DNA of 64,000 nt from assembly GCF_030144855.1 (NCBI RefSeq), contig NC_082723.1, positions 15,624,001 to 15,688,000 of the forward strand, read 5' to 3'. Shown piece by piece: positions 29,216 to 56,796 of the stretch. The notes beneath the pieces were generated by a model. The model was not told the origin of the DNA. It saw only the letters and a program-made list of their open reading frames with translations, and did not search any database. Both the position numbers and the translations under genes were made by a program. Numbering within the stretch: position 1 is the first letter of the stretch; every line of letters begins with the position of its first letter. Source of the DNA: Hypanus sabinus. Lineage: Eukaryota.

Positions 29216-29774
29216 ATGCCAAGGAGGGGTTAGTTAGAGCCACTGGAGTACAGGCGGAGGAGTACTTAAATACCCTAAAGTTGAGAGTGAAAAAGACTGA
29301 AGACAGTGAAAATTTGGGGAAAAACTGTAAATACTGGAAATGTTAAATTAAAACAGGAAATACTGACTAACAGAAAGAGAAGTGAGTACTTTTTCAGGTC
29401 AGAGACCCTTGGCCAGAACCAGGAAAGAGAAACCACCCTAGTTTTCAGCATCAGGGAAGGTAGAGTAAGGATGGCTAGAACAAAGAGAATATCTCTGAAA
29501 CAGTGAGACCAAAAAAGTCTTAAAGTGGAAGTTAGAAGTACATTGTACTTTTATTTTGTCTCAGGAAGAGTTATCTAAAGTTGTAGAATTCAGGGCTGGG
29601 TCCAGAAGGCTGCAATGTGCTGTAAGAGGAGATGTTGTTCCAAGTTGACACAGAGAGAAGGGTCAAGGTGGGAATGGGATGCTGAATTACAAGTGGTAAG
29701 CAATCAGAAGCTCAGGGTCACTCTAGTGGCTTGAACTCGGCTGTCCCACAGAGCTCAATCACTCAACCTGGAGC

Positions 29775-30140
29775 AGCAGACATAAATTGCTGGAGGAACT
29801 CAGCAGGTCGGGCAGCATCTATGGAAAAGAGTACAGAGTCAACGTTTCATCCGGACAGGAAAAAACGATAAGAAGTCAGAGCAAGAAGGTGGGCGGGGAG
29901 GAAGAAGTACAAGGTGGCAGATGATAGGTGAAACCGGGAGGGAGGGGGGAGAGGAGGGGTGAAGTAAAGAGCTGAGAGGTCGATTAGTGGAAGAGAGAAA
30001 GGGCTGGAGAAAGGGGAATCTGATAGGGGAGGACAGAAGGCCATAGAAGAAAGAAAAGGAGGAGAGGAGCACCAGCGGGAGGTGAGGAGCAGGTAAGGTG
30101 AGAGAGGGTGGGGGAGGGCAAATACCAGAAGTTCGAGAAA
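29775..30140 (-). mobile_element. Penelope-like terminal repeat
   Basis: Colinear with 41410-41840; hammerhead region internally deleted. Confidence 0.75.
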
Positions 30141-32277: not shown

Positions 32278-32738
32278 GTTGTAGAATCTGGGAAGGAATA
32301 TTGGGAGAATAAATTGGGATTCAGGAGGGGCTGGTGTGGACTCAGGGAGGTGAAAGGCCTGCTTCTAAGCTGTACGCTGCAAATTAAAAATAAAATTTCA
32401 AAAGTTGAGAATGACATTGTTTGGTTGGGTTGTGGCAGAGAAGATCAAAATACCAAGACGCTGGAACAGTTTGGGGGGTGGGGGAGTGTTGATGCTTTTG
32501 CTGCTGTGTGTGCATGGGAGAAGGAGGGGGGCTTTGGGGTTATAATGTTTTCTGTCATTCATTCTTCAGGGTTTTTTTCCTTCTGTTTTGTGGATGTCTG
32601 TGAAGAGTAAGAATTTCACGCTGTGTTCTGTATACATTCTCTGATATTAAATTGAACCATTGAAGATCTTGATAATTTTGCAGAATGGATGCCTCTTCAC
32701 CAAATGAGTTTCAATGAACCTGTTTTTTAGATCAGTAC

Positions 32739-33302
32739 ATGTCTCCGGTGGTGACAGGAATGGACGTGACCAGCCGATGTACCAGTGGTGATCCGAACCG
32801 GCTTCCGGAGGGACTGCCTCAATCTGCGTGCTTGCACTATATCTCTGACAAGCACCCCCGGCTGACCCTGGACGCCATCAACCAGCTGAGGAAGAACCAG
32901 GGCCTGTGCGACGTGGTGCTTGTCGTGGGCCTGAAGAAGATCTATGCCCATCGAGTGGTGCTTGCGGCTTGCAGTCCGTACTTCCACGCGATGTTCACGA
33001 GCGAGCTTGCTGAGAGCAGGCAGACGGAAGTTCTCATTAGAGACATCGATGAGCGGGCCATCGAGCTTCTCATTGAATTTGCATATACATCCCAAATTAT
33101 TGTGGAAGAGAACAATGTTCAGACTTTGCTGCCGGCTGCTTGCTTACTGCAGCTGACTGAGATTCAGGAGACCTGTTGTGAATTTTTAAAGCGGCAGCTA
33201 GATCCGTCCAATTGTTTGGGAATCCGAGCGTTTGCTGACACTCACGCGTGCCGAGAATTGCTGCGGGTGGCGGATAAGTTCACACAACACAACTTTCAGG
33301 AG
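32739..33302 (+). CDS. KLHL20: Kelch-like protein 20-like, coding exon 1 (BTB, start of BACK)
   Basis: [54 protein letters not shown]...HNFQE; acceptor at 32730, donor GTGAGA at 33303. Confidence 0.95.
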
Positions 33303-34890
33303 GTGAGAAGTTTCATTTTTTTCCTTCCCACGAATTGAACTATTTTTGGAATTGTGGACAGAGGAGTGAAATTCGGAATGGCAATCTTGAGACTGCTACG
33401 TCACCCGGTAGGCAGCTTTTGTGTTGGTGGTACAATGAATCTTATCAGATGCAAGGACCACAGTGTACAGTTTCAAAAGAGTACGAGTAGGCAGTTATCT
33501 TATATACACAGACTAAATGGAGCCTAAATTTAAGAGCTGACGCTGGGCTGTGATGTTCGCAGACGTCGTGGTTCAGATTTTGTTGTTTTTTTAGATTCGT
33601 AAGGTTAGTTTTATAGGCAGCCAGGGTTGCTAGGGGGACAAATTAGGATTTAGATTCAGGGATAAGGGGAAGGTAACAAAGAGTTTGGACAGGAGCTGGT
33701 GTTTAGAGTCCGGGTCAAAGGAGCTGAAGAGATCCTGGAGTTGGGTTGGCAAGCGCTGAAGAGGTCAGAGACCCCCAGGCGAGGGAGTCCTGGGTCTTGG
33801 AGGTCCACATGGCGCATGAGTCACGTAGGCTGGTGAACCCCCCCCCCCCCCCCCAACCAGGTCATTGAAGTTGCCCAGAGGTGGCCTGTACTAGGTTTGG
33901 AGGCCTGTTGTGTGTGTTTGAGTAGGTGCTGTTGTGTTTGTTATTGAGGGATAGAGCAGGGCACACCAGGATACCAACATGCAGGATACTCAACGGAACT
34001 TTATTGCCAAGCCTGGGGCGTGTACAGTATGTGAACTCCTCCCATGTGGGGGCGGCTAACACAGTGGCATAGGAGTAACCGATTAACTACCACTACTCCT
34101 GGCTGGGTGAGAGGGTGGGGCAGAGGCTTGTTTTGCTGGTTTATTTAGTTACCTTTTGAGTTGTTCTGATGAACATTGTGGGCATGCTGCTGTATGTTGG
34201 TGCCAGGTTATGTGGCTGCACTTGCTGTCCCCATCACATCCTTGGGTGTGTTAGTTGTTAACTTAAGCGACACATTTCACTGCACACTATGTTTCGATGT
34301 ACATGTGATAAATAAATCTGCATCTGAGTTGGCCTTCCTGCTTCTGTCCTGTTATTTTACGCTTTCACAGTGATTATAGAGGGTCACCTGTGTCCACCAG
34401 CAAAGCCACATCTTTACTGTTTTGGAGCTAGCCTTTGATTATATTTTAATAAGATAATTATCTATCCTGTCATTCCCATAATCCATTCTTGATTACAGGA
34501 GCATATAAAATTTGGATATAAAACTTATTGGGTTTTTTTCTTTACATTGATGCTGCCTGAGCTGCTGAATGTTTCCACATTTGCTGTTTTTTATTTGGGG
34601 CAATTAAATTGCTGTTATAAACTGTGAAATGGAGTCACATGAAGAACACCCACTTAACTGGAGATTAGGAGGATCAAGCATCTGACTGACTCCCATTGTT
34701 TGGTCCTGAGATTGGATAATTTATCACCACTGCGCAACTTGTACGGCATTTATCCATTTTCGAAATAACTTGAAATAGTCTTTGGTGTAATTTGACCACA
34801 TCATAGTATCTCAATAGTATTTAGTTAAATCCTGTCTAACACAGAAAGAAATTTGCCAGGAATAAGTTTAGATGTGACGCTTAAACTTGT

Positions 34891-35086
34891 GAACACACAC
34901 AAAATGCTGGAGGAACTCAGCAGGTCAGGCAGCACCTATGGAAAGGAATAAAGAGTCAACATTTCAGGAAGAGACCCTTCATCAGGCCAGCCGATAAAGG
35001 GTCTCAGCCTAAAAAGTCGACTCTTTACTCCTTTTCATAGTTGCCTGCCTCACCTGTTGAGCTCCTCCAGCATTTTGTGCGTGTTC
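34891..35086. mobile_element. Palindromic Penelope-derived fold-back element with head-to-head hammerhead motifs
   Basis: ~95-bp inverted arms; centre CCCTTCATCAGG-CCAG-CCGATAAAGGG. Confidence 0.8.
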
Positions 35087-35569
35087 TCTGAATTTCCAGC
35101 AGAAACTCTTGAGCTTCCGTTTTTACTTGTAGTTCTTATATTTTAGGTGTTACATTTATTTAAATCCACATTTCTCTGTTGCCTTCAGCTATCCTTGGAC
35201 CTTTTATATATATCAGTATAATAAATTATTTTCTTGTTTTCTAGTCTATTATCTTCTAAGTAAGAAATAGTCTGATTAACTGCAGGAAGTAAAAGCAGTT
35301 AGCATGCAACCTTAAAGACTTGGGCAAGGTTATACTTGGCGATCTGTAAATACCACATAGATTGCTCAATACTTTGTGAAATAGTGAGACGCAGGTCTTC
35401 CTCTGCAGTAACCACCTTTCCTGAAGGCTGCCTCTTATTTCCCTTAAGGAAAAGAAAGCCAGTACATCACATGTTACAAAGAGAAATGTTTTGTGGTGTG
35501 ATAACCCTGTTGTTATGAAACCAAGTATTGTGAATTTTAAAACTCCCAAGTGCTGGCTTTTATATCGGT

Positions 35570-36530
35570 ATAGAAGTTACATGAAATTTGTTGTTTAGCG
35601 ACAGCAGTACAGTGCAATACATAAAAACACTATAAATTACTATCTATGTAAATAATTAGTGCAAAAAGAGAGGGGAAATGGTGAGGTAGTGTACATGGAT
35701 TCAATGACCATTCAGAAATATGATGGCGGGGGGAAGAAGCTGTTCTGAAAACACTGAGTGTGTGTCTTCACGCTCGTGTTCCCCCCACCTTGGTGGTAGC
35801 AATGAGGAGAGGGCAGGCCTTCGGTGATAAGGGTCCTTAATGATGGGTGCAGCCTTTTTGAGGGTGTTCTCAGTGCTGGGGAGGTTAGTGCCCATGATGG
35901 AGCTGACGGAGTTTACATCATTCTGCAGCTTTCGGGTCCATCGCAGAGGCACCCCCACCCCATACCAGGCACTGATGCAACCAGTTAGAATGCTCTCCAT
36001 GGAACATCTATAGACATGAAATATAGCCGCTGTTGTGCCTTCTTTGTAATTGCATCAGTATGTTGAGCCCAGGATAGACCTTCAGAGATATTGACACTCC
36101 GAAACTTGAAACTGCTCACTCTTTCCACTGCTGTTCCCTCAATGACTGACTGGTGTGTGTTCCCTCGACTCCTCTTTCTGAAGTCCACAATCAGCTCCTG
36201 GTCTTACTGACTTTGAGTGCAAGGTTGTTGCTGTGACTCCACTCAACCAGCCCATCTGTTTCATTCCTGTACACCTCGTCGCCATCTGAAATTCTGCCAA
36301 CAATAGTTATGTCATCTTCAAATTTATAAATGGCAATTGAGCTGTGCCTAGCCACACAGTCATGGGTGTAGAGAGAGTAGAGCAGTAGGCTAAGCACACA
36401 CCCCTGAAGTGTGCCAGTGTCGATTGTCAGTGATGAGGAGATGTTATTTCCGGTCTGCGCCGACTGTGGTCTCCTGATGAGGAAGACAACGATCCAGTTT
36501 CAGAGTCTGGTAAAGAGGCCCAGATTTTAT
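35570..36530 (-). mobile_element. Rex/L2-type LINE RT fragment
   Basis: LLYSLYTHDCVA...IYKFEDDITIVG, TKKAQQRLYF, ESILTGCISAWYG; frameshifted. Confidence 0.85.
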
Positions 36531-36640
36531 GGCAAGTTGATTGACTCTTGTTTATTTCAGTATTAGAAATTTTAATTTCTTTGTATATTCTCACTTAATT
36601 ATTATGCCCATATGGAACGAATTAATGATATTTGGGTTGT

Positions 36641-37133
36641 ACTTTCAGTAGCCTTTTTATTAGGTACCTCCTGTGGCCAATGTGTGTAAGTTCATGGTCT
36701 TCTAATGTTGTAGCCCATCAACTTCAAGGTTTGAAGCGCTGTGCATTCGGAGATGCTCTTCTGCATAGTACTGTTGTAATGTGTCGTTATTTGCCTTCCT
36801 GTCAGCTTGAACTGGTCTGCTCATCTCCTCTGACCTCTCTCATTAACGAGGTGTTTTCACCCACAGAACTGCTGCTCACCGGATTTTTATTTATTTTTTT
36901 GCATCATTCTCTGTAAACTCTAGAGACTTGTGTGAAAATCCCAGGAGATCAGCCACCCTGTCTGGCATCAACAATCATTCCATGCTCAAAGTCAAAGTCT
37001 CTTACCCATTCTCATGTTTAGCCTGAACAACAACTGAACCTCTTGACTATGCTTTTATGAGCTGAGTTGCAACTATTCTCTGAGATATTTGCATTAACAA
37101 GCTGGTCTACCTAGTGAAGTGACCGCTGAATGT
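36641..37133 (-). mobile_element. Non-autonomous Tc1 element (second copy)
   Basis: Reverse complement of 26645-27185; degenerate TIRs at both ends. Confidence 0.8.
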
Positions 37134-37777
37134 ATTTGGCACATCACAAATAGCAAATCAGGTTTTACAAGTTGCAGATGCATTTGGCTATAAAGGAGCT
37201 TCCCATTTCAGCTTCCCAAAGAGTATACAGCCAAAGTTGGTAAGTCTAGACAGCTATAATCACCGTTTGCTCTTTTGTGCCATGGTGGATATGAGCAGCT
37301 GGTATACATTTCAAATACATTCGAATGGTAGTCTACACGGCTTATGATTGAAAGGAAGCCATGCACAATTCTGATGCTCAAGCCCTTGCTGTCCACCGTT
37401 GTCTGTTTGTTATTGTCCTCTTTCTTGCTAACGCCCTTCGAGTAGATTCTAATCTAACTGGAATGATCTCTTTTAAGTTCCTACAAAAGGAAATGTTTAC
37501 ATGGTGTAATAATCCTGTTCTTATGAAACCGTATATTTTTGATTGTAAAGCTTTTTAGTAAAATGCAGGCTTTGTATATTTTCAATAAAGTTTTGTAACT
37601 CTATGGAATGAAGCCGTTCTTGTTTATGTGTGACTTACAGGGACAGTGGATATGCTCACTTCACAGAAGCCACCCTATCTATTGCCAAAATGCATCCATT
37701 GATACATTCTTATTCAATTATAACTGTTTTTGATACCTAATTGAAGCTTTTGCATTTTGTGAACTCTTTTTACACAG

Positions 37778-37936
37778 GTAATGGAGAGTGAGGAGTTTAT
37801 GCTTCTGCCAGCAAATCAGATGATTGACATTATTTCCAGTGATGAGTTGAATGTGCGAAGTGAGGAGCAGGTGTACAGTGCTGTTGTATCCTGGGTCAAG
37901 TATAACATTCAAGAGAGGAGAGGACACCTTGCTCAG
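37778..37936 (+). CDS. KLHL20: KLHL20-like coding exon 2 (BACK), 159 nt
   Basis: [53 protein letters not shown]; AG/GT boundaries, phase 0/0. Confidence 0.95.
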
Positions 37937-40900
37937 GTATGAAGGAAGTGATTGAGTGGAAAAGTAGATTTTTCTGCTCTCTCTGCATGTTGGTTTGAAT
38001 TCATCTCAGCTTTCCATATTCTTGGTATGCTCCAGAGTTTTTCTCATGCAAAGGATAACAGGCAGCCAATCTACTGCTGGCAGTGCAAATGCAAATATAA
38101 ATAAATAGCGAGAACATGAGATAATGAGATAAAGAGTCCTTAAAGTGAGATCATTGGTTGTGGAAACATCTCAATGATGCGGCAAGTGAGTGTAGTTATC
38201 CCCTTTTATTGAAGAGCCTGATGGTGGAGGGGTAGAGTACCCAATGGTTGGCAGAATAGAATACTCCTTGCTTCTCTAGAGTGTAGGCGTAGATATTTTA
38301 CCTGAAACCTTTGGAGTAGGATTTAACCCAAAACAGTAATAACTAAGGCACATCTAACACATTGGTTAGTTGATGTTACGAGCGTTGACTTTATTGTTTG
38401 TAATGGATATTCATAATGAGTTTGTTTCTCAATAATTGAATGCCTGGACTTTAAAAAAACACACCTGAAATTTGGTCCAAAATGCTAATTTCAGTCAGAT
38501 GAGATCACAAAATATAAAAAGATGTCACACTTTTCCTGTTAAAAATGTTAATTCTAGTCCTGTTTGGGATGTACCTGCTTTCAGGTTTGTGCTGTTGAGA
38601 CTGAGTAGCTATCATGGCCACTGATCTTGATGCAAACTGCCATGAAGATCTGCCAATCTGTGATATTTACCAATATTGTCTAGTATCGTTATTGAGTCAA
38701 GGCAGCTGCTAGTGTTTGGTGACAGTGATGTCATGAAGCAAAATAATTTAAGAGCCAAAGTTTTAAGTACTGGTTAATAAACCATTAAAATTTCACTTCC
38801 ACACCCTGCACCAAATAACACTTCTGAAATATTTTATGATGAGAATAAATTGCCATTTCCTTGGCCATTAACTTTCCTTGATGATGCTAAAGAAGACAGC
38901 AAAGCTACACATTCTGTAAAGGAGAATGAATGTCAAATTCTGCTTTACTTGGCACATGTTTGTAAATTTTGAAGCTGCTCTCAATTCTGCTCTGTAATAA
39001 TGTGGAGGACCCCCCTTTGTTCATCATGCAGCTGCAGACTCCAAGCTGCTTTAATTTTAATGCAAATTTAATCATCGCAAATGTAACAGCACACTGAGTA
39101 GGAGAAAATCTCTGTTAAGGAGTGAACACCATCTTCTAATTTGAAAATGTGTTTGTGAGTATTAAGGTTTTTGGATGTAGCAGCTGGAACTTTGGCGTAC
39201 ACTTTTTTAATGTTATGAAATGCCCACCTGAACAATTGCTTCTGCCGCCTGCCATGTGCCAGTTAGCTGCCGTGTTTCCTATTTTAAAAAGATAAACATC
39301 CTCTGAAAATTTTCCATTGTAAATTGAAATGGTGTGAGGCCATGAAAGGCTGTATGTTAATCCAACTACAGTATATTTTGTATTCCATGAAAACGATTTT
39401 GGAGTTACAAGTCACAAGTGGTACTACAACAGTAACTTATACATTCTCACACTAATTTGTACTATTTCTTCATAATACTATCCAAATATTATCATTATTT
39501 TATTGTTGAGGTACAGCACAGAAAAGGCCTTTCCAGCCCTTCGCCCAGCAATCCCCTGATTTAACCCTAGGACAATTTACAAAGACTAACTAATCTATCA
39601 ATCGGTACATCTTTGGACTGCGGGTGGAAACTGGAGCATCTGGAGGAAACGCATGCTTTCATGGGGAGAACATACAGACTCCTTACTGGCAGTGGAGGGA
39701 ATTGAACCTCGGTCACCTGTACTGTGAACTGCTACCATCCCATCTGAAAAGTGATCTTATTTATAGTAGCAGAGAACTCTGATAATTAAGGTAATTTTTC
39801 AAAGAATGACTATACTTTGAAGTTGAGGCTAACCAATAATTCACATGACCTTGACTTTCTTTTGCTTTGGGTTATACTGCGTCATCTGCATTGATGGCCA
39901 TAACTTCTATATAGCATCTTTGAGAGTAAGGATTTAGCTGATTGTTGGTAGCTGTCCTGTAAATGATAAATTCCATAAATATTAAAAAAGACCCACATGA
40001 TGTAAGGGAAGTAACTTCAAGCATTTCAATATTGTTAAATCCTGGAATTAAGAGAAGTTTCTGATCTCAGTAATGGAAGCTATAATATGACTGTACTGTT
40101 ATAGTTGGGGGAAGTGAAGCCTGTCATCTTTGTCTTGTTTGGTGTATTTGTGATTCCAGGCCCATCACTGTGATTGTTTCATCAGCTTATTTCAACGATG
40201 ATTAGAAAAATTGTTAGCAATACCAACTTTCTGCATCCTCTGAGTAATTTAAACAAAAATATCGGGGCAGTTAAGTGTCAACTGTATTGTTGGGTTCTCT
40301 GCTGACAGGTGAGTCTCTCAGTTGGTGGTAGTTGGCACAAGGTGCAAAGTAACCCCAATAACTTCCACTGTAGCATTATTTTTAACTAAAATCCAAACCA
40401 TTTTCCATAGCTATTTGCAACCAGCAACAGAGTGAAAAATTAAAACCAACCATTGGATAAACTGAGGCAAAGTCAATGCCACCATCTCCTCCTACTCTGT
40501 GCAGCTTGACTTTGAATGGGGTTATTAATAAAGGACAGTGGGAAATGAGTGGTAGTATTGATACATTAACTGTCAGCTTAGATGCTGGGTTTGCTGTGAT
40601 TTTGGGGTGGTTTTGAATTGTGCGATTGAAGTTCCAGCAACTTGAGGGAGGAGATGGAAAATGGAAGAATAAGCAGCATGGTTGTGTGGCAGTTACCATA
40701 CTGCTAGCTGTAAAATTGATCAGGGTTCAACTGCCACTGCTGTCTGTAATGCGTTTGTACGTTCTCCCTTTGACCACGTGTCTTTCCTCTGGGTGCTCTG
40801 ATTTCCTCCCACATTCCAAACTTGTACTGATTAGGGTTAGTAAATTGTAGGTTCGTGATGGAAGCATAGTGATGCTTGTGGCCTGTCCCGCACAACCCTT

Positions 40901-41168
40901 GCCGATTTAATTTGACTCAAACAACACATCTCACTGTATGTTTCAATGTACCTGTGACAAATACAGCTAATCTTCATCTTTAACCTTTAAGAACTTTCCA
41001 TTAGTTAATGCTGGCAGTCTTTTGACTATAGTGAGCAGTCTTTGTTTAGAGTAGAAGGGTCAAAATGCCTTTTGTAGTTTTTAGATTTGGAGAGTTTGCC
41101 TCTGGATAATATATATTGCAGTGAAGTTTCGTGTTCTTTTCTTCTTCCCATTCTCTCCCCCACCCTAG

Positions 41169-41263
41169 GTCTTGCAACACGTTCGTTTGCCATTGCTGAG
41201 TCCTAAATTCTTGGTTGGCACAGTTGGAACAGACTCTTTGATCAAAAGTGATGAAATGTGCAG
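41169..41263 (+). CDS. KLHL20: KLHL20-like coding exon 3, 95 nt
   Basis: [31 protein letters not shown](R); not in the ORF track; TAG/GTAATA boundaries. Confidence 0.95.
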
Positions 41264-41501
41264 GTAATATCCATTGTACACTCAGCAAGCATGCTATATG
41301 GAAGAGTTTCTATATTACAAAAAAATCAATCGGTACTTATGAAGCCACAACATTGCTGCATAAAATGGCTGATCATTGGAAGCTGAATAATTGTTCATTG
41401 TGTTTACAAACAAGAGAAACTGCAGATGCTGGAAATCTAGGCAACACACACAAAATGCTGGGAACTCAGCAGGCCAGGCGGCATCTATTGAAATGAATAA
41501 A

Positions 41502-41539
41502 CAGTCGACGTTTCAGGCTGAGACCCTTCATCAGGACTG
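41502..41539 (-). ncRNA. Minimal type I hammerhead ribozyme motif, core intact
   Basis: CAGUC-CUGAUGA-AGG(GUCUCAG)CCU-GAAAC-GUC-GACUG: helix I CAGUC/GACUG, conserved core, GUC cleavage triplet, palindromic ACGU helix III. Confidence 0.8.
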
Positions 41540-42423
41540 GAAAAAAAGATGAGGAGTCAAGTAAGAAGGTGGAGGGGAGGGGAGGAAGAAGTACAAGGTG
41601 GCAGGTGACAGGTGAAACCAGGAGAGGGAGAGGGGTGAAGTAGAGAGATGGGGCCGATTTGTGAAAGAGAGAAAGGGCTGGAGAAGAGGGGATCTGTTAG
41701 GAGAGGACAGAAGGCCACAGAAGGAAGGGAAGGGGAGGAGCACCAAAGGTGATGGGCAGGTTAGGAGATAAGGTGAGAGAGGGAAATGGGAATGGGGAAT
41801 AGTGAAGGAGGAGGGAAGGCCAATTACTGGAAGTTCAAGAAATCAACGTTTATGCCATTAGGTTGAAGGCTACCCAGGCGGATTATAAGGTGTTGCTTCT
41901 CCACTTGTTTTGATTGCAAGGATAAGTGTTACACCTGTCCCTACACCTGCTCCCTCATTACCATCCTGGGCCCCAAACAATTCTTCCAGGTGAGGTGACA
42001 CTTCACTGGTGGAGTCATCTAGTGTATCTGATGCTCCTGGTGTGGCCTCCCGTTAATTGGTGATTGAGAGACTGCTTCACTGAGCACCTACACCGGAAGA
42101 AAATGGGATTGCCTGGTGGCCACCCATTCTCATTCCGACATGTCAGACAATGGCCTTCTCTACTGTTGTGATAAGGCCACATTCAGGGTGGAGGAGCAAC
42201 ACCTTATATTCTATCTGGGTAGCCTCCAAACTGATGGCATGAACGTCGATTTCTTGAACTTCCAGTAATTTTCCCCCACCCCATTTCCATTTCCCTCTCT
42301 CACCTTATCATCTCCCTTTGGTGCCCCTCCCCTTCCCTTTCTTCTGAAGGTTTCTGTCCTCTCCTATCAGATTCCCCCTTTTCCAGCCCTGTATCTGTTC
42401 CATCAATCAACTTCCCAGCTCTC

Positions 42424-42452
42424 TAGATAGATAGATAGATAAATAGATAGAT
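42424..42452. repeat. (GATA)n microsatellite, 3' tail of Rex1
   Basis: TAGATAGATAGATAGATAAATAGATAGATA. Confidence 0.9.
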
Positions 42453-43401
42453 ACTTTATTCATCCCCAAGGGGAAATTCAACATTTTTCCAGTGTCCCAT
42501 ACACTTATTGTAGCAAAACTAATTACATACAGTATTTAACTCAGTATAAATATGATATGCATCTAAAATCACCCTCCCAAAAAGCATTAATAAATAACTT
42601 TTAAAAAGTTCTTAAATAGTTTACTAAAATGCATTGAGTGGTAACTTAAGCTCAGTCCTAACCCCGGCACTTTAACATGTCTTGCCCCTGGTGGTTGAAT
42701 TGTAGAGCCGAATGGCGTTGGGGAGTAATGATCTCTTCATCCTGTCTGAGGAGCATTGCATTGACAGCAACCTGCCGCTGAAGCTGCTTCTCTGTCTCTG
42801 GATGGTGCTGTGCAGAGGATGTTCAGGGTTTTCCATGATTGACCGTAGCCTACTCAGCGCCCTCCGCTCTGCCACCGATGTCATACTCTCCAGTTCTGTG
42901 CCCACGACAGAGCCCGCCTTCCTTACCAGCTTATTAAGATGTGAGGCGTCCCTCTTCTTAATGCTGCCTCCCCAGCATGCCACCACAAAGAAGAGGGCGC
43001 TCTCCACAACTGACCGATAGAACATCTTCAGCATCTCACTACAAACATTGAATGACGCCAGCCTTCTGAGGAAGTACAGTCGACTCTGTGCTTTCCTGCA
43101 CAGAGCATCTGTGTTGGCAGTCCAGTCTAGCTTCTCGTCTAACTGCACTCCCAGATACTTGTAGGTCTTAACCTGCTCCACACATTCTCCATTAATGAAC
43201 ACTGGCTCCATATGAGGCCGAGATCTCCTAAAGTCCACCACCATCTCCTTGGTCTTGGTGATAATGAGACGCAGGTAGTTTGAGTTGCACCATATCACAA
43301 AGTCCTGTATCAGTTTCCTATACTCTTCCTCCTGACCATTCCTGACACACCCCACTATGGCCATGTCATCAGCGAACGTCTGCACATGGCAGGACTCCGA
43401 G
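42424..43401 (-). mobile_element. 5'-truncated Rex1/Babar LINE
   Basis: Open 237-aa RT C-terminus (FADDMAIVG, KTKEMVVDFRR, YKYLGV, SRLYFLRRL); AATAAA followed by (TATC)n tail. Confidence 0.9.
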
Positions 43402-43517
43402 ATCCCTATTTCGCCCTATTTAACCCTTCCCCCTCCCGGTTTTATCTATCACACACTACCTTGTATTTCTTCCTCCCCTCCCTCATCTTCTAGCTCTGAC
43501 TTCTCATCTTTCTCCCC

Positions 43518-43554
43518 CAGTCCTGATGAAGGGTCTCGCCTGAAATGTCAACTG
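43518..43554 (+). ncRNA. Minimal hammerhead motif, CpG-decayed
   Basis: CAGUC-CUGAUGA-AGGGUCUCGCCU-GAAAU-GUC-AACUG; core intact, with two transitions in helices I and III. Confidence 0.6.
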
Positions 43555-44559
43555 TTTACTCTTTTCAATAGATGCTGTCTGACCTACTGAGTTCCTGCAG
43601 CATTTTGTATTTACTGTTGATCTGTTACTCATTTTAACATCAATGTCATTTTGTAGTTTCAAATGATTTGGAACTCCATTTGAGCAAAGTCTTTATATGT
43701 TTGTATCAGTTACTGTGATTTTTTTTTTAAGTACTTATTTTAGTTTTAGTCTATTTTAGCTTTGCCAAAGAACTGTCTGGTGGCTTTTGACTCCACACCA
43801 TCATCTACAATTATTTGAACATAAATCTGTGCATTTTCGGAAGATGAGCTTTTGTGAATTGATGTTATATCTGATATTTGAACTGAAATCTAAAAAGGAA
43901 AGAATTTTCAGGGTGGAAGTAAAACATAGTTGTAGTGTTCCAAATATACAGTAATGATTTTCAAACTATCATGCAATTTTTCCATCATCATTTGCAAGAG
44001 TGCAGAACATTGATCAAATTTTAGTGTTAAGACCAGTTATTGAATTTTATGAACTATTTAAAGAGGGGCTGTCACTTTTGGGATCTCACACAATGTGCTG
44101 AAGTGGAAGTGGACAGAGCTCTGGAAATCCAATTTGCAACAACTTTGAACATACAGAATTTTAATAGTGAATTAATCACTGGCCTTCAGCTGGAATTATC
44201 AAGGCAATAATTTAAAGATTCTCCCCTATTATTGATTGGCCATAAAGTGAACTGGCTTGGGCAGTGTTTTAACACATTTTGTTAAAATGTATTGTGGTTT
44301 TGTGTTATCACTTGCTCATTTATTTAAGACTTCCAGAAAGACTGCGACAAAAGGCTGCAAGGGGCTTCCAACTCTTTATTTAGATAGTAAGGTGCGTATT
44401 CTTGGCACAACACCAAAAAAAAACATTCAGGCATGCCCTTCTCACACTTGTGTCACCAGCCTTCTCCTTCAATGTACTTGCATCGATCACAAGAATTATT
44501 TGTGATATTAAGCTCTAATTCTGACCATTATCTGGAAAATGAATTTTTCCCTGTATTTC

Positions 44560-44850
44560 CACAGATCCCTGAACGTTGCCTCACAGGTAGATAGGGTAGT
44601 TAAGAAAGCTTATGGGGTGTTAGGTTTCATCAGTCAAGGGATAGAGTTTAAGAGACGCGATGTAATGATGCAGCTCTATAAAACTCTAGTTAGGCCACAC
44701 TTGGAGTACTGTGTCCAGCTCTCGCCTCACTATAGGAAGGATGTGGAAGCATTGGAAAGGGTACAGAGGAGATTTACCAGGATGCTGCCGGTTTAGAGAG
44801 TATGTATTATGATCAGAGATTAAGGGAGCTAGGGCTTTACTCTTTGGAGT
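44560..44850 (+). mobile_element. CR1 RT fragment
   Basis: QVDRVVKKAYG...LVRPHLEYCVQ...QRRFTRMLP. Confidence 0.9.
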
Positions 44851-46129
44851 TTTAAAACATCTGATTAAATGAACAGTTTTATTGCTAGCTGTATAAGGCT
44901 GTTTGCTGAAGCATTTTCTAGATTTTTGCACCTTTTTAACATTGGCTGTTCTTTGTTGCTTTCTACTAGAACAGTCTGAGATACTCAATCCATGCTGACT
45001 CGTTAGAATCTACAAGATACTGTGTAGAAGCCTACTGCTAGATATAGTATCTGGGTTGTAAAGTAAATTAAAAAAACAAAGGTTAATTGTTTTCATTTTG
45101 GCCTCTGCAGTTTTTTTGTCAAAGAACAAAATCTATTTAACCATTCCAGATCTACTCATTATTTCATCTCTAAAGACCAGTTTTATAAGGGATCTTTGAC
45201 AACTAGTGTCCAAGAATATAGCTTCAGGTTCCTACAATTGGAATATTTGTTATATGACTGAAATGCCTAATGTTACCTTGCATGGTTTCATTTTCAAATT
45301 CTTTGCATATAGCTGGGCTTTTTCTTTTAATGGTTAGTACTCCATTCCAGTTAAAACTTTTTAAGTACTGTGAAATGCACATTTTGCTTTGGATGGACCA
45401 TAAAAGGAATCCAAATGTGTCTTGCGATTGATTTTTGTTCACTGAATTTTATTTATATAATCCTGACTGCTTTTTTTTTAAAAAGTACCATTATTTGGTT
45501 GTAATTTTTCATGGAGAAAAATAAGCCTTTTGTAAAGACAAATAAACATGCCTTAAACTCACTGAATTCCGTTAGCAATTTTTTTAATATTCTAACCAAT
45601 TTTTCATGGGTAAATTTATAAGATACTAGTTAATACGAATGGATAATTTCCCTTCTGTCATTCACTGATCTCTGTGATAAGAATAAAATACTTCTGAAAA
45701 AGTTCAATATTCTCAATATTAAACACAAAAACATCACAATCAATATCTTTGGAAAGTATTGCAGTTCAGGTTACTTGCCTTTAAGAAGCAATTGTATAAT
45801 ATTTGTTTAGAGTTGGCACTCAATGTAGCTTTTTTAAATACATACAAAATGCTGGAGGAACTTAGCAGACCAGGCAACATCTATGGAAAAGGGTAAACAG
45901 TCAACATTTCAGGCTAAGATCCTTCATGAATTCCTCCGGCATTCTGTGTGTATTGCATTGATTTCTAGTATCTGTAGACTTTCTGTTGTTTGCTGCAACT
46001 GTGTGTCATATACACTTGACAGTGTCATTATATACACTTGACAAATGGATGGTTGCATCATAATGATTTTTTTCTCTATTCCAACACCACATTTTCATTC
46101 TGTACTGCCCAACTCCATGTGTTCTTCAG

Positions 46130-46245
46130 AGATCTCTTGGACGAAGCAAAAAATTATCTACTTCTGCCGCAGGAGAGACCCCTAATGCAAGGCCCTCGAA
46201 CTCGACCTCGAAAACCTATTCGATGTGGAGAGGTGCTTTTTGCTG
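46130..46245 (+). CDS. KLHL20: KLHL20-like coding exon 4, 116 nt
   Basis: [38 protein letters not shown]; CAG/GTAAGC boundaries. Confidence 0.95.
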
Positions 46246-46274
46246 GTAAGCTGAACATGGTAGTTTATTTAAAC

Positions 46275-47420
46275 TAGTGGTCGCCAACCCGTCGATCGCA
46301 ATCGACTAGTTGATCTCGGAGACTTTCCCAGTAGATCCCGAAAAAAAGAAAAATAAATAAGCAAATACTGTTGAGAGACAGTGTCCGGATTGCGGGGTTT
46401 TGGTTCCGTTCTTTCTGCCCGGTGCGCATGCGTGTAGCTCCCCCACCCCCCCGCACTACACAGTGTACATCAGTGGTCCCTGACCACCAGGCCAGAGGAA
46501 ACAATATGCGTCAGCTGCTCCTTTCCTCATTCCCTGTCACGCCCACTGTTGAACTTGAATGCACGCGAGGTCATTACCCAAGCGCGCCAGAGATCACTGG
46601 TTGGCCTCGGGTAACTGGCTGGCGGGAAGTGCCGATGCTACCAGCCCAGAGTGTGGACAGATGGGCTCCGCCTCTGAACGTGTTTAGCACACCGAATGTT
46701 CGTGGGGAACCCGGTGCTAAAATATTCACAGACCTCATTCGTGCTCAGGGTTTCATAAGCAGCAGATCAGCTACCTCGCTGGATTTACTGAAACAAACTT
46801 CTGTTGGCCGATAGGTCCTACAAGGGGGGCGGGCGCACGTCCTCATGCACTCCTCACTTGGTCGGTCGGTCGCTCTCCGGACTGCGACTGCCGCGGCCCC
46901 GGTATGGAAACAGACACACCTGGCCAAGGTGGCAGGCGGGCGGGCGGGAGGCTGGAGGCTGTCTAATGAGGCAATGAAGCCCTCAAAACTGTTCTGGTAC
47001 CGAGTCCAAGCACCCCGCACTGAAAGACAAACTCGTTGAGTTCTTTTCCAGCGGATAAAACGTGAGTAAATGGGACAGCAGCTGAGAGCCACGTCAACTA
47101 AATTGCAGAATAGACTGGACATAAGGAGCCTGTTTCGAGTATATCTGTACTGCCGTCACATTTAACACCCACACCCTCCCCCCCACCCCCCGTCAGCCAG
47201 TCTGCAAGAATATTGTCAATATTAAACCTGTCTGCTATGCAAAAAAAATGGTGGTGACCCTGGTGCTTATACGTTATTTCTACTTCTGGGTTGCGGGGTT
47301 TTAGTTCCGGTCTTTTCTGCCCCGGTGCTCGTGCGCGTAACTAATAGATTTGGAGTCGATCTTGCCTTTCACTAAGGCTGAGGAAGGGGAGCTTGGACTT
47401 AAAAAGGTTGGTGACCACTA
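46275..47420. mobile_element. Non-autonomous hAT (Charlie/Buster-like) element
   Basis: TIRs TAGTGGTCGCCAACC / GGTTGGTGACCACTA; exact 8-bp TSD ATTTAAAC; BED-finger remnant NEAMKPSKL...SKHPALKDK near 46965-47045. Confidence 0.92.
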
Positions 47421-47837
47421 ATTTAAACAGTAGTTTATAGTATAATTAGCCTATTACTAAATATTTCAAATTTGTGTGGATTCAGCAGTGTTTTCTGTTA
47501 GTTATGAATCTGACATCATTCTATTAGTCTTTTCCGAAATTATGTCGTTATAGGGCTTATAAATCTGCTTGCTTTACTAAAACATACTGCAAATGATTAA
47601 ACTGGCATCTAGACATATAAAACTGTCTTTTCAGTTAATAGTTGTTCTCAGCGTGCAGTTTAATGTTGGATTTTAACCCTTAATCAAGCTAAATACAGCA
47701 GCGCCTCTAGCTAACCTGAATTAAAAATGCTAAAAAAAAACTCAGCAGTCCAGGCAACTTCAGTGGAAAGATAAATAATTTTTATTTTAGTTTTTATTTA
47801 TTGAGATACATTGTGGAACGGGCCCTTCTGGTTCTTA

Positions 47838-48232
47838 AGAACATAGAATATAGAACAATATAGCGCGGTACAGGCCCTTCAGCCCACAATGTTGTGCTGA
47901 CCCCTAAACCCTGCCTCCCATATAACCCCCCACCTTAAATTCCTCCATATACCTGTCTAGTGGTCTCTTAAATTTCACTAGTGTATCTGCCTCCACCACT
48001 GACTCAGGCAGTGCATTCCACACACCGACCACTCTCTGAGTAAAAAACCTTCCTCTAATAACCCCCTTGAACTTCCCTCCCCTTACCTTAAAGCCATGTC
48101 CTCTTGTACTGAGCAGTGGTGCCCTGGGGAAGAGGCGCTGGCTGTCCACTCCGTCTATTCCTCTTGATATCTTGTACACCTCTATCCTGTCTCCTCTCAT
48201 CCTCCTCCTCGCCAGAGAGTAAAGCCCTAGCT
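47838..48232 (-). mobile_element. CR1 3' fragment inserted into a V-SINE
   Basis: ELGLYSLARRRMRGD...FFTQRVVGVWNALP; the SINE continues on both sides. Confidence 0.88.
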
Positions 48233-48656
48233 CCCTTTCTTCCAACCATGCTGCCCAGCAACCCCCAGTTTAATCCTAGCCTAATCACAGGACAGTTTAC
48301 TATGACCAATTAACCAACCAACCAATCAGTATGTTTTTGGACCATGGGAGGAAACCGGAGCACCCTGTGGGGAGAAACCCACACAGTCACAGGGAGAACG
48401 TACAAGCTCTTTACAGACAGCAGTGGGAAATTAACACAATCGCTTTTTGTACTTTGTTTCTTCCTTATTTCCTAGAAACATCATCTTATTAACAGCAACT
48501 TGATTGGGTTGGGCAGAGCTTTAGGGACAGCTTCAAGCCAGTGAGCACTGAGTCTCTAACATTAGCAAGTGAGATTATGGATGAGCAAAACCTTGTTAAA
48601 TACAAGAATCTTTTTAATGCTATCTTTTAACCTTTTTTTGTCCCTTTTTTATGTAG

Positions 48657-48840
48657 TTGGTGGTTGGTGCAGTGGTGATGCAATCTCCAGTGTGGAACGC
48701 TATGATCCTCAAGCACATGAATGGCGAATGATGGCATCGATGTCTAAGCGAAGGTGCGGTGTCGGTGTGGCAGTTCTTGATGATCTTTTGTACGCAGTTG
48801 GAGGTCATGATGGGTCTTCCTATCTCAATAGTGTAGAAAG
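48657..48840 (+). CDS. KLHL20: KLHL20-like coding exon 5 (Kelch 1-2), 184 nt
   Basis: [62 protein letters not shown]. Confidence 0.96.
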
Positions 48841-50953
48841 GTAAATTTAAAGACTTTTTTCAATGGCCTATTCTTGCTTCATGAAGAACCAGGCAGCACA
48901 TTTGATTACTGACCTGTCTTGTTGGGGCTGTCATACTGATCAGAATCCAGTGTTAGTAGTTGATTTTACCGGGTAATATTTGGGATACGAAGTGGCTATT
49001 GCTGCCTGGAAAAAGCAGGCAAATATCATTGGGGTGAGGGTAGTGTCATGCTTCAGATTACTATCTTTTAACTAATGTTGGAAGATTAGGTTTATATCCA
49101 GGAGATATTCTCTGTGTAGGCTTGCAAATAAAGATTGGGTGCTTAAAGTGGAAGTCAGCAAAATTGTTGTAGCTTTAGGGTACTAGGACTATGAATTCAA
49201 TCTTTTGTTCTATATGAGAGAGTGATGCAACAAAAGGTTTTGATTTATGGGGAAGTTATTAACTAGAGGTCATCAACACAAGATCATCACCAAAAAATCC
49301 AATAGAGAATTTAGAAGGAACTTTTTTTTTACCGAGGGGATAGTTCTAGGAACTTGGATTCAATCAATCTAACATTTCTGAGCAAGGGAGTACTTGCTGC
49401 TTCCATACCAGTCCTGAGCCCATAAAGAAGGGTACTAGATTGATACAATAAACTATCACCAATACAGAAACCATTAAATATAAGAAATTAACTTGCATAA
49501 GTTGAAGTTGGACCACATGTACAAATGTTGATTTACTTCTCCCTGGTTTGCAAAATTAGAGCTGTATGAATTCCTGGACATCTACTCTATATAAATGATA
49601 AAGTATTTCTTTCAAAACAAATTGTTGAGACATTTTTTTATATCTATGGATCTAGCACAATCTAATTGAATGGCACAATGGGTGTAGTGGATTCGATAGT
49701 CAAGTAATGTTTTGGAAACTTGAATGTTTCCATCTTAAAAATGATTTGCTGCTGTCACTGTTAAACAGTAGGTTGCATTAAGTTCTCAAAGATGAGAAGG
49801 TTTTGTGACATTAATTTCTGATGAAAAATTAAGTATTTCTCTCTACACAGGTGCTGTCTGATTTGCTGAGCTTTTCCAGAATTCTCAGTTTTTTACATAT
49901 ATATGAACTAACTAGCATCTGGTTCAATAGGTTATTTTCTGGATTTAGCCTCTAACTCCTCGCTTAGCTTGCAGGGTACATACATTGTACTTCTGTAATA
50001 TGTGCACAAATGAACGCAGGAAGAATGTGTACCAGTTTATTGTACATTAATGACTTTACTGCACAGTTGAAGTTTTCCAATGGGAAATCAAAGAGGAGGA
50101 GTTGCCATGTTTTTTAAGGTAGATAAAGCAGTGTGATAGATAGTAGGTGACTCCATGTCCCCAGAATTTATTAACTCTACTTCATTTTGAAGTAGTTTTG
50201 TATTTAAATGTAGAGATCTTGGAGGCCATCTCATGGAGCTTCATTTTTTTCTCTAAGTTATCACTACATATAGTACATTGTGTGTGTTTTTGAGACTAGA
50301 TGAGGAGATACAAGATGGATAATCCTTGGAGCAAAAAGATTATCATTCATTAATGAAGTTATAGTCTATCTCTAATTTTACTTGCTCACATTTGCTGCAG
50401 TTCTCTAACACACATACAAGATGCTGGAGAAACTCAGCAAGTCAGGCTTGTCTAGCTTGTTTGTAATATCTGCATTTTTTTCAATTGACAGATTTAATTA
50501 TGAAACTTTGGCATAGCTGGGGGAAAATGTTGGAATTTTTTCAGCAAGTCTTAAGGGATTTACAAAACAATTCAATGTATGATGTGCAAATTTATCTCCT
50601 ATAGATCAGAGATTCCTTCATTACTTAAGATTTTTAAGAAAAACTCCTTATCCTTATATGCTGTAGATAATATTTAAATTTAAGTAGTTTATGCCAAGTA
50701 ATTTGTTTTATTTTTAAGAGTTAAATTTGCATTTTTTTCTCCTGTTTGATTCATCCATACTGTGTTGTCCCTGTCAAGTTCACTGCCGGATGATTAATTA
50801 ATGATAAGTGCTTCAGTAATGAACTGGCAATTTACTTGATTGGCTGTGACGTTCCTTTTGTTTTTGTTGTCTTTGGATCTACAAAAAGTACATTACACAT
50901 GATAGTGTTACCAAAGTAAATGAAAAATAGGTGAAAACTGTGTCTTTTTATTA

Positions 50954-56686: not shown

Positions 56687-56796
56687 TATTTTTTATTACG
56701 TATTGAAAGGTTTCAGAATAATGTGTTTGAATTTATAGGTTCTCCTACTAAACCATGTCTCTTCTAATTTGATATTATTTTGGCTGTATTGCAAAG

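What the first reader, a model, noticed from the sequence alone, without database searches (positions are those of the whole stretch)
41502..41539. Core-intact minimal hammerhead ribozyme, one of about ten dispersed copies
Seen: the minus strand reads CAGUC-CUGAUGA-AGG(loop)CCU-GAAAC-GUC^GACUG, with all catalytic boxes, a 5-bp helix I and a loop-less palindromic (ACGU) helix III. Decayed or partial copies lie near 3487, 8727, 21717, 22236, 26373, 34953, 34990, 43518, 45898 and 58505. Established: Penelope-like elements carry minimal type I hammerheads thought to cleave as dimers. Inference: this genome may hold a very large pool of such motifs, some inside introns, where they could pair in trans and cut pre-mRNA or yield small linear or circular RNAs.
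Basis: partly seen in the sequence, partly recalled or inferred. Interest (0 to 1): 0.8.

Follow-up and report, generated by a model that had tools for sequence, protein, structure and literature searches.

The report
Relic Penelope-element hammerhead ribozyme motif
The 38-base motif is a real minimal hammerhead-ribozyme sequence, but it is the well-known motif in the 3' end of Penelope-like retrotransposons, here in an old, truncated, antisense intronic copy, so it is ordinary.

Summary
The minus strand of 41502-41539 reads as a complete minimal type I hammerhead, and all ten other listed sites are decayed copies of the same repeat.

It belongs to the 3' end of a Penelope-like retrotransposon (PLE), probably Neptune-type. 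Each long copy runs:
- GIY-YIG endonuclease C-terminus and stop codon;
- about 285 nt of CT-rich UTR;
- the hammerhead;
- 66 nt, or about 100 nt when the optional PLE "tail" is present.

The window holds 17 arms of this repeat, all 5'-truncated, and five pairs lie head-to-head. No copy is in tandem.

Only the reported copy keeps every core base. One more, at 43518-43554 (+), passes a relaxed descriptor. The rest decay at least as fast as their flanks, largely at CpGs, so inserted copies show no sign of selection.

The intact copy lies antisense in a likely intron of a KLHL-type gene. Its head-to-head partner would lock either hammerhead into a 185-bp duplex if the two were co-transcribed.

PLE hammerheads that act as dimers have been published since 2014. 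The scan already holds 325 notes with both words "hammerhead" and "Penelope", at least eight on other pieces of this genome.

One loose end remains: arm 5' ends cluster at the hammerhead's 5' border and at its cleavage site.

The parts
41502..41539 (-). Intact minimal type I hammerhead motif (copy A). Predicted cleavage is between 41507 and 41506.
41409..41907 (-). Copy A, a 5'-truncated PLE 3' end. It holds the last 27 codons of the GIY-YIG endonuclease (41907-41827), the stop codon, a CT-rich 3' UTR (41823-41540), the hammerhead, a 66-nt post-hammerhead segment, and the optional ~34-nt tail (about 41440-41409).
41909..42265 (+). Copy B, head-to-head with copy A. This is a decayed reading frame for the CxxC linker and GIY-YIG endonuclease. 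It aligns to residues 245-379 of P0011 (50% identity, E 1.5e-30) and 253-366 of P0002 (54.5%, E 8e-32). It carries several stops and frameshifts.
42266..42425 (+). Copy B stop codon and first part of its CT-rich 3' UTR.
42426..43415 (-). Nested insertion that splits copy B. It is a CR1-like LINE fragment; the ORF 42672-43385 carries the ALKBH8_N-type domain also seen at the end of the LINE reverse transcriptase at 4337-5263.
43416..43608 (+). Copy B second part: 3' UTR, near-intact hammerhead at 43518-43554, and the short-form 3' end. The hammerhead has a one-base loop deletion, U15.2.G16.2, and one helix I mismatch.
34892..35101 (.). Head-to-head mini-palindrome of two hammerhead-plus-tail arms (F on the minus strand, G on the plus strand). 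Both hammerheads are decayed. The arms meet at the hammerhead's 5' border.
45837..45987 (.). Head-to-head pair H (minus strand, decayed hammerhead at 45898-45932) and I (plus strand, tail only).
21630..21763 (.). Head-to-head pair O (minus strand, starts at the cleavage site) and P (plus strand, decayed hammerhead at 21713-21749).
7801..7957 (.). Head-to-head pair L (minus strand, starts at the cleavage site, long tail) and M (plus strand).
21910..22337 (+). Copy C: last codons of the endonuclease, 3' UTR, and a dead hammerhead at 22236-22273 in which GAAA is lost.
29772..30140 (-). Copy D, with the 5' half of the hammerhead deleted.
3486..3593 (+). Copy E. It starts at the hammerhead's 5' border, and the CUGAUGA box is lost.
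26311..26421 (-). Copy J. Its hammerhead has G8 changed to A (CUGAUAA).
8696..8786 (-). Copy N, with a decayed hammerhead and an internal deletion.
28134..28243 (+). Copy K. It starts within 2 nt of the cleavage site and has the long-tail 3' end.
58501..58580 (-). Copy Q: 3' UTR plus the 5' half of the hammerhead. A segment similar to the tail extension lies just downstream (58468-58495, minus strand); an internal deletion is the likely cause.
32718..62741 (+). Host gene context: a BTB/BACK exon (32718-33335) and Kelch-repeat exons (48566-48841, 59340-59534, 62439-62741) of a KLHL-type gene. The reported hammerhead lies between them on the opposite strand.

Best explanation
The motif is the minimal type I hammerhead that Penelope-like retrotransposons (PLEs) carry in their terminal repeat region. 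Here it sits in an old, 5'-truncated 3' end of a Neptune-type PLE in what looks like a cartilaginous-fish genome.

Shown here: the order of parts in the element is endonuclease C-terminus, stop codon, CT-rich UTR, hammerhead, then 66 or about 100 nt to the insertion's 3' end.

From the literature: in a live element, two copies of the RNA motif pair through the ACGU palindrome to form helix III. Each copy supplies the enzyme strand for cleaving the other after GUC. Activity is weak and probably helped by protein. The PLE protein cuts both DNA strands and starts reverse transcription at internal sites, which accounts for the optional tail and the head-to-head inverted copies.

Inferred: the copy at 41502-41539 is a chance survivor among neutrally decaying relics. 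It has no role for the host gene. It is antisense in a likely intron and is paired with an inverted partner that would sequester it.
For: Motif and chance:
- The motif is exact, with 0 descriptor hits in 300 shuffles.

Link to a PLE:
- The same repeat continues upstream into a decayed frame. That frame aligns to the linker and GIY-YIG region of proteins P0011 and P0002, with E 1.5e-30 and 8e-32.
- Those proteins and their relatives carry GIY-YIG, with sub-threshold Pfam hits in P0011, P0021 and P0020.
- Atlas look-alikes of P0002 are clusters with RVT_1 + HTH_animal + GIY-YIG.
- The CX3CxxC linker is visible in the translation. That motif marks the Neptune and Nematis clades (PMC8557442).

PLE hallmarks described in PMC8557442:
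- Heavy 5' truncation.
- Inverted 5'-truncated partners: A/B, F/G, H/I, L/M and O/P.
- Two classes of 3' end, at about +59 to +74 and +82 to +108, which is the optional 30-40-bp tail.

Independent support:
- A little-skate locus shows the same order: endonuclease end, CT tract, CUGAAGA...GAAACGUC, then a homologous tail.

Neutral decay:
- Per-copy hammerhead divergence is 8-23% in the nine other full-length copies. The following 63 nt diverge by 8-14% in the six of them whose tail is not deleted, truncated or heavily diverged.
- 40% of CpG cells in the hammerhead are mutated, and 15 of those 23 changes are transitions.
- About 0.10 intact copies are expected by chance, and 1 is seen.

Literature: PMC4209133, PMC6765202 and PMC11167929.
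Against: - No reverse-transcriptase domain of this family lies in the window, because every copy is 5'-truncated. The RT-EN architecture therefore rests on homologues.
- Pfam GIY-YIG hits on those homologues fall below the curated cut-off, and the window's own pieces give no Pfam hit.
- No Rfam hammerhead model matches, even at E<=10 on a 351-nt slice.
- Copy A has 0 of 38 changes in the hammerhead against 11-16% in its flanks. That is mildly unexpected (P about 0.1 after allowing for about 10 copies) and could hint at constraint.
- Self-cleavage was not and cannot be tested here.
Confidence: 0.88

Rival explanations
1. A short non-autonomous element, either retrozyme-like or a 'solo pLTR' mini-element, made only of the hammerhead plus about 100 nt. 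It would be copied by the PLE enzyme and might yield small linear or circular RNAs after self-cleavage.
For: - Most arms are only 45-120 nt long.
- Five arms start within 8 nt of the hammerhead's 5' border, and three start at the cleavage site.
- The same 5' border is seen in little-skate loci.
- A 2026 preprint argues that animal retrozymes derive from PLE terminal repeats (10.64898/2026.07.22.740005).
Against: - There are no direct tandem repeats of the unit anywhere in the window, and tandem organisation defines non-LTR retrozymes.
- Short and long copies share no diagnostic differences in the +1 to +66 segment.
- The reported copy itself continues 380 nt upstream into the endonuclease frame, so it is a truncated autonomous-element end.
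Confidence: 0.08
2. A host-exapted intronic ribozyme that regulates the KLHL-type gene's pre-mRNA, like the conserved intronic hammerheads of amniotes.
For: It lies in a likely intron. It is the only fully intact copy, although its flanks are 11-16% diverged.
Against: - It is on the strand opposite to the gene.
- It has no closed helix III and no loop-loop contacts.
- No Rfam family matches.
- Survival by chance is plausible.
- In a transcript covering both arms, the inverted partner would bury the sense-strand hammerhead in a 185-bp duplex.
Confidence: 0.02
3. A chance match to the hammerhead consensus inside an unrelated repeat.
For: Rfam hammerhead models do not match. Helix II is only 3 bp.
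Against: - 0 of 300 shuffles give a match.
- The majority consensus of the family is the complete motif.
- The repeat is contiguous with a PLE endonuclease frame.
- The motif recurs at the same place in a skate PLE.
Confidence: 0.01

Closest known systems
Minimal hammerheads (min-HHRs) of metazoan Penelope-like elements (Cervera and De la Pena 2014, PMC4209133; Lunse, Weinberg and Breaker 2017, cited in PMC6765202)
   Same: - Type I topology and a CUGANGA/GAAA core.
- A short helix I of 4-5 bp.
- No helix III loop, with palindromic positions 15.2-16.2 that imply action as a dimer.
- Location in the element's terminal repeat region.
- Mostly solitary, truncated copies, and opposite-strand pairs 100-700 bp apart.
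   Different: - In this copy helix II is only 3 bp and position 11.1 is U. The published consensus has a bulged base, G10.1-C11.1 and a long helix II of 6-8 bp.
- Copy P (and, less securely, the truncated copy Q) and the skate locus keep C at 11.1. Position 11.1 is the C of a CpG with G12, so the U may be CpG decay or a subfamily state.
- No covariation is visible among the window's copies.
Neptune-clade EN+ Penelope-like elements of fishes (Arkhipova 2006; Craig et al. 2021, PMC8557442)
   Same: - A C-terminal GIY-YIG endonuclease preceded by a CX2-5CxxC linker.
- Strong 5' truncation.
- An inverted 5'-truncated copy abutting the 5' end.
- An optional 30-40-bp tail.
- A hammerhead near the 3' end.
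   Different: The reverse-transcriptase part is missing from every copy in the window, and no partial tandem (pLTR) arrangement is seen here. The clade call rests on the linker motif only, not on a tree.
Poseidon element PAc of Anolis carolinensis (PMC11167929)
   Same: The hammerhead lies about 100-200 nt upstream of two adjacent internal start sites for reverse transcription, and these define the tail. The protein cuts and extends both DNA strands, which fits the head-to-head copies.
   Different: In PAc the hammerhead overlaps the start of the ORF. Here it lies about 285 nt after the ORF's stop codon. PAc belongs to a different clade.
Animal non-LTR retrozymes (PMC7229834; 10.64898/2026.07.22.740005)
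   Same: A type I hammerhead with an unstable helix III, a probable PLE origin, and no coding capacity in the short copies.
   Different: Retrozymes are direct tandem repeats that give circular RNAs. The copies here are solitary or inverted, never tandem.

Membership tests
Hammerhead ribozyme, minimal type I (PLE variant) | Catalytic core: C3 U4 G5 A6 N7 G8 A9, G12 A13 A14, A15.1-U16.1, and a cleavage-site base H17 | tested here: met
   Exact in 41502-41539 (minus strand). The majority consensus of 12 copies is identical.
Hammerhead ribozyme, minimal type I (PLE variant) | Helix I formed by the 5' and 3' ends (4-6 bp) | tested here: met
   CAGUC/GACUG, 5 Watson-Crick pairs.
Hammerhead ribozyme, minimal type I (PLE variant) | Helix II with a G10.1-C11.1 closing pair and an unpaired base after A9 (PMC4209133) | tested here: inconclusive
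   This copy has U at 11.1, giving either a 3-bp AGG/CCU helix or a G.U start. Copy P (and apparently the truncated copy Q) and skate locus L001 keep C.
Hammerhead ribozyme, minimal type I (PLE variant) | No or minimal helix III, with palindromic 15.2-16.2 so that two copies can form it together | tested here: met
   ACGU with no loop. A nested double-hammerhead pairing can be drawn and scores -14.1 kcal/mol, but it is less stable than the inactive folds.
Hammerhead ribozyme, minimal type I (PLE variant) | Compensatory changes in helices across family members | tested here: not met
   Differences among the window's copies break pairs or are CpG transitions, and none is compensatory. The sample is small and consists of dead copies.
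Hammerhead ribozyme, minimal type I (PLE variant) | Match to a curated Rfam hammerhead model | tested here: not met
   No hit at gathering score on the whole window, and none at E<=10 on 41350-41700. I would expect this for a motif without a closed helix III (my inference; not checked against the models).
Hammerhead ribozyme, minimal type I (PLE variant) | Self-cleavage after H17 | not testable with these tools
   This needs in vitro transcription of monomer and dimer constructs.
Penelope-like element, EN+ (Neptune-type) | [quoted passage not shown] | tested here: met
   - tblastn of P0011 and P0002 onto 41909-42265 (+) and 41907-41827 (minus strand).
- Sub-threshold GIY-YIG Pfam hits in the homologues.
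- Atlas clusters carrying GIY-YIG.
Penelope-like element, EN+ (Neptune-type) | CX2-5CxxC linker before the endonuclease | tested here: met
   C-KDK-C-YT-C appears in the translation of 41882-41995 (+). The same motif is in P0011 and P0002.
Penelope-like element, EN+ (Neptune-type) | Telomerase-like reverse transcriptase in the same ORF | not tested
   No copy in the window reaches that far. The reverse transcriptases at 4005-5263 and 51421-56543 are LINE-type. Support is indirect only, through look-alikes of P0002.
Penelope-like element, EN+ (Neptune-type) | Frequent 5' truncation with an adjacent inverted 5'-truncated copy | tested here: met
   Five head-to-head pairs. The arms of a pair share private variants, for example A/B and F/G.
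Penelope-like element, EN+ (Neptune-type) | Optional 30-40-bp tail at the insertion's end | tested here: met
   3' ends fall at +59 to +74 (8 arms) or +82 to +108 (6 arms) from the cleavage site.
Penelope-like element, EN+ (Neptune-type) | Partial tandem copies forming pseudo-LTRs | tested here: not met
   No direct tandem of the unit in this window. This does not exclude the family, because most genomic copies are solitary.
Non-LTR retrozyme | Direct tandem repeats of a hammerhead-bearing unit | tested here: not met
   TRF finds only a 24-bp minisatellite. Copies are solitary or inverted.
Conserved intronic hammerheads of amniotes (Rfam HH9/HH10) | A complete three-helix ribozyme in the sense strand of a host intron that matches the curated models | tested here: not met
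   Antisense to the KLHL-type gene, with no Rfam match.

The most novel reading that the evidence does not exclude
The hammerhead domain shapes how these elements insert. The 5' ends of copies pile up at two places, the 5' border of the hammerhead (-35 to -28) and the cleavage site (-2 to +3).

One reading is that copies starting at +1 are cDNA run-offs on RNA that had self-cleaved in vivo. That would be a genomic footprint of PLE hammerhead activity, which RNA-seq failed to show in Anolis (PMC11167929).

Copies starting at about -34 would then mark the 5' end of the RNA. They would be short products of internal initiation of reverse transcription at the upstream of the two terminal repeats.
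Probability: 0.2. Interest if true: 0.5.

Novelty: new member of a known kind. Interest (0 to 1): 0.15.

Why it matters
As it stands it matters little. It is one more relic of a class of ribozyme-bearing retrotransposon ends that has been catalogued in animal genomes since 2014.

It is useful as an annotation key. The many "hammerhead" hits in this genome can be read as Neptune-type PLE 3' ends, and their palindromic mini-insertions as by-products of an enzyme that primes on both DNA strands.

The one point that could repay a genome-wide look is whether copy 5' ends really stack at the cleavage site. If they do, that would be indirect evidence that these weak ribozymes cut in vivo.

Tried and rejected
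- **Rfam:** the scans gave no hammerhead match.
- **Pfam:** the stop-free pieces of the window's endonuclease remnant gave nothing. The link had to go through a full HMMER search with a 66-aa piece and tblastn back onto the window.
- **The reverse transcriptase at 4005-5263:** I considered it as the PLE's own, but it is CR1-like LINE-type (FADD motif, ALKBH8_N-type tail). P0020 is likewise a chimeric gene model of LINE RT plus PLE endonuclease, so I did not use it as evidence of architecture.
- **Public collections:** exact-pattern scans of metagenome and viral contigs for the motif found nothing.
- **Fetching a full-length element:** this failed for the closest homologues because the assembly files are too large, or because the proteins were not on record.
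- **The 1179-aa ORF at 13401-16940:** it is a minisatellite artefact.
- **Lunse et al. 2017:** the paper could not be read, so I cite it only through PMC6765202.

Full report
**1. The observation**

The minus strand of 41539->41502 reads CAGUC CUGAUGA AGG GUCUCAG CCU GAAA C G U C | GACUG. In standard hammerhead numbering this gives:
- C3-A9 and G12-A14 intact;
- A15.1 and U16.1 in place;
- C17 as the cleavage base, at window 41507, with cleavage between 41507 and 41506;
- a perfect 5-bp helix I;
- no helix III loop, since A15.1-C15.2-G16.2-U16.1 is the palindrome ACGU.

A relaxed descriptor of my own finds only this site and 43518-43554 (+) in the window, and nothing in 300 dinucleotide-preserving shuffles.

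One qualification applies to "core-intact". Position 11.1 is U, so helix II is either a 3-bp AGG/CCU helix or starts with a G.U wobble behind a bulged A. The published consensus for PLE min-HHRs has a bulged base and a conserved G10.1-C11.1 (PMC4209133). Position 11.1 is the C of a CpG with G12. Copy P (and apparently the truncated copy Q) and a skate relative keep C there. The U may therefore be CpG decay or a subfamily state.

No Rfam hammerhead model matches, at gathering score on the whole window or at E<=10 on a 351-nt slice. I would expect that for a motif with no closed helix III, though I did not check the models.

**2. The repeat family**

BLAST of the surroundings against the window shows a dispersed repeat with 17 arms. 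Five further arms lack most or all of the hammerhead.

The majority consensus of the hammerhead columns is identical to the reported copy.

Every other copy is damaged. Examples are:
- CUGAUAA in J;
- loss of GAAA in C;
- loss of CUGAUGA in E, G, H and N;
- half-deletion in D and Q.

B is nearly intact. It has a one-base loop deletion, a U.G pair in place of C-G in helix III, and one helix I mismatch.

**3. What the repeat is**

The long copies begin with a reading frame that ends ...EEQHLIFRLGSLQ.DGMN.DF.NF-stop. I searched with a 66-aa stop-free piece (42068-42265, +) against 1.8 billion representative proteins. It found 40 relatives.

tblastn of two of them back onto the window gave these alignments:

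| Protein | Residues | Window | Identity | E-value |
|---|---|---|---|---|
| P0011 | 245-379 | 41909-42265 (+) | 50% | 1.5e-30 |
| P0002 | 253-366 | 41909-42259 (+) | 54.5% | 8e-32 |

The last 27 residues also align to 41907-41827 on the minus strand.

The aligned region has two parts:
- a C-x3-C-x2-C linker;
- a GIY...YIG core with the R, H, E and N residues.

Pfam gives GIY-YIG hits just under the cut-off for P0011, P0021 and P0020. The Atlas look-alikes of P0002 are clusters that combine RVT_1, HTH_animal and GIY-YIG. RT followed by a GIY-YIG endonuclease is the architecture of EN+ Penelope-like elements. The CX2-5CxxC linker marks the Neptune and Nematis clades (PMC8557442).

The homologues come from the Atlantic stingray and little skate assemblies (species names). 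The window is therefore probably from a cartilaginous fish.

A little-skate locus shows the same order of parts: endonuclease end, stop codon, CT-rich tract, CUGAAGA...GAAACGUC, then a homologous tail.

The anatomy of copy A, on the minus strand, is:

| Part | Window coordinates |
|---|---|
| Endonuclease codons | 41907-41827 |
| Stop codon | 41826-41824 |
| CT-rich UTR | 41823-41540 |
| Hammerhead | 41539-41502 |
| 66 nt to the short-form 3' end | 41501-about 41441 |
| Tail extension of about 34 nt | to 41409 |

**4. PLE hallmarks**

Craig et al. (PMC8557442) list four features of PLE insertions:
- heavy 5' truncation;
- an inverted 5'-truncated copy abutting the 5' end;
- an optional 30-40-bp tail;
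- a hammerhead in the terminal repeat.

All four are present here.

- **Head-to-head A/B pair.** A (41907->41409) and B (41909->43608) meet at 41907/41909. B is split by a nested CR1-like LINE fragment at 42426-43415.
- **Four mini-palindromes** of the last 45-120 nt lie at 34892-35101, 45837-45987, 21630-21763 and 7801-7957.
- **Single insertion events.** The arms of a pair share private variants, as expected if each pair arose in one insertion event.
- **Two classes of 3' end.** They fall at +59 to +74 and +82 to +108 from the cleavage site. This matches the two adjacent internal start sites for reverse transcription shown for the Anolis element.
- **Origin of the inverted pairs.** The Anolis protein also cuts and extends both DNA strands (PMC11167929). 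That is a ready source of inverted pairs.

No direct tandem arrangement exists in the window.

**5. State of the copies**

Across the nine other full-length hammerhead copies, per-copy divergence from the consensus is 8-23% in the hammerhead. The next 63 nt diverge by 8-14% in the six of them whose tail is not deleted, truncated or heavily diverged. In the hammerhead, 40% of CpG cells are mutated, and 15 of those 23 changes are transitions. Inserted copies therefore decay at least as fast in the ribozyme as outside it. I saw no compensatory pair changes.

Copy A has no change in 38 nt, against 11-16% in its flanks. Given the divergence of about ten copies, roughly 0.10 fully intact motifs are expected, so seeing one has P of about 0.1. 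That is not evidence of constraint.

**6. Would it work?**

ViennaRNA gives these energies:

| Fold | Energy (kcal/mol) |
|---|---|
| Hammerhead fold of the monomer | -7.2 |
| Alternative inactive monomer fold | -10.8 |
| Nested double-hammerhead of two copies (each as enzyme strand for the other) | -14.1 |
| Two inactive monomers | -21.6 |
| Best dimer fold | -24.8 |

This fits the published picture. These motifs cleave poorly, and only as dimers or with help from the element's protein (PMC4209133, PMC6765202, PMC11167929).

**7. Genomic context**

A BTB/BACK exon (32718-33335) and Kelch exons (48566-48841, 59340-59534, 62439-62741) on the plus strand place the site inside a likely intron of a KLHL-type gene. 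The intact hammerhead is on the minus strand, so the host pre-mRNA carries its complement.

The near-intact copy B is in sense. On a shared transcript, however, it pairs with the complement of A over 185 nt. That duplex scores -271.7 kcal/mol, against -63.3 for the two arms folded apart, and every base of B's hammerhead but one is paired in it. Sense and antisense transcripts of the two arms would likewise form double-stranded RNA rather than a ribozyme dimer.

**8. Comparison with what is known**

This is a member of the PLE min-HHR class (PMC4209133), which was reported in Neptune, Poseidon and Xena elements of fishes and in thousands of solitary copies per genome. A 2026 preprint records PLEs and hammerhead-bearing derivatives in one chondrichthyan (10.64898/2026.07.22.740005).

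It is not a retrozyme, because there are no tandems. It is not one of the conserved intronic hammerheads either.

The scan's own index holds 325 notes with both words "hammerhead" and "Penelope", at least eight of them on other pieces of this genome. One follow-up reached the same reading for a fold-back copy elsewhere.

**9. A loose end**

The 5' ends of the arms are not evenly spread.
- **At the hammerhead's 5' border.** Five of the 12 short arms start at -35 to -28. This has P of about 3e-4 for a pre-set 8-nt window, but the window was chosen after looking.
- **At the cleavage site.** Three arms start at -2 to +3. This has P of about 0.01, and the site was set in advance.
- **In the skate.** Three more arms in the skate loci start at the 5' border.

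Three features of the sequence may bear on this:
- Upstream of the border the consensus is a long pyrimidine tract ending in CAG, which looks like a splice acceptor.
- In Drosophila virilis the Penelope intron also ends at the 5' end of helix I (PMC4209133).
- GUCGAC across the cleavage site is a 6-nt palindrome.

Possible causes are an RNA 5' end at about -34, cDNA run-off on self-cleaved RNA, or palindrome-guided joining of the two cDNAs. One window cannot decide between them.

Noticed in passing
window 13452-16840: A 24-bp minisatellite (unit AGCCATGGAGCCAGTTCACACTAC) of about 135 copies at 80% match. It is open in several frames and produces a spurious 1179-aa ORF (13401-16940) with no Pfam hit.
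   Followed up: yes
window 22951-24024 (-): An uninterrupted 357-aa ORF with a strong Galactosyl_T domain (E 2.4e-40). It looks like a single-exon beta-1,3-galactosyltransferase-type gene and is flanked by PLE relics.
   Followed up: partly
window 32718-33335, 48566-48841, 59340-59534, 62439-62741 (+): Exons of a BTB-BACK-Kelch (KLHL-type) gene spanning at least 30 kb. Most of the PLE relics downstream of 33 kb sit in its likely introns.
   Followed up: partly
window 4005-5263 (+), 42672-43385 (-), 44512-44793 (+): Fragments of CR1-like LINEs, with a reverse transcriptase followed by a domain that Pfam calls ALKBH8_N. One fragment is nested inside PLE copy B.
   Followed up: partly
window 51421-56543 (-): A decayed LINE with an AP-type endonuclease and a reverse transcriptase, split over several ORFs in a very AT-rich stretch (GC 0.31-0.35).
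   Followed up: no
window 63154-63998 (+): Open frames that end at the window edge and read like the esterase-type ORF1 of a LINE (GDS...G.ND motifs). Not checked with any tool.
   Followed up: no
window 20427-20788: A run of 362 N (gap or masked). Left as it is.
   Followed up: no
proteins P0004, P0025, P0021, P0001: Several public gene models in stingray and skate assemblies end in the PLE endonuclease C-terminus fused to unrelated domains (GPCR, RecQ5/SRI, DUF4518). These look like annotation chimeras or exonised PLE fragments.
   Followed up: no
L002 3086-3146 and L003 860-975: The little-skate locus has the same head-to-head junction at the hammerhead's 5' border. A 975-bp Logan contig carries a related PLE 3' end with a damaged core (CUGA-AGGG) but a conserved tail motif, AGCATCTGCAG.
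   Followed up: partly
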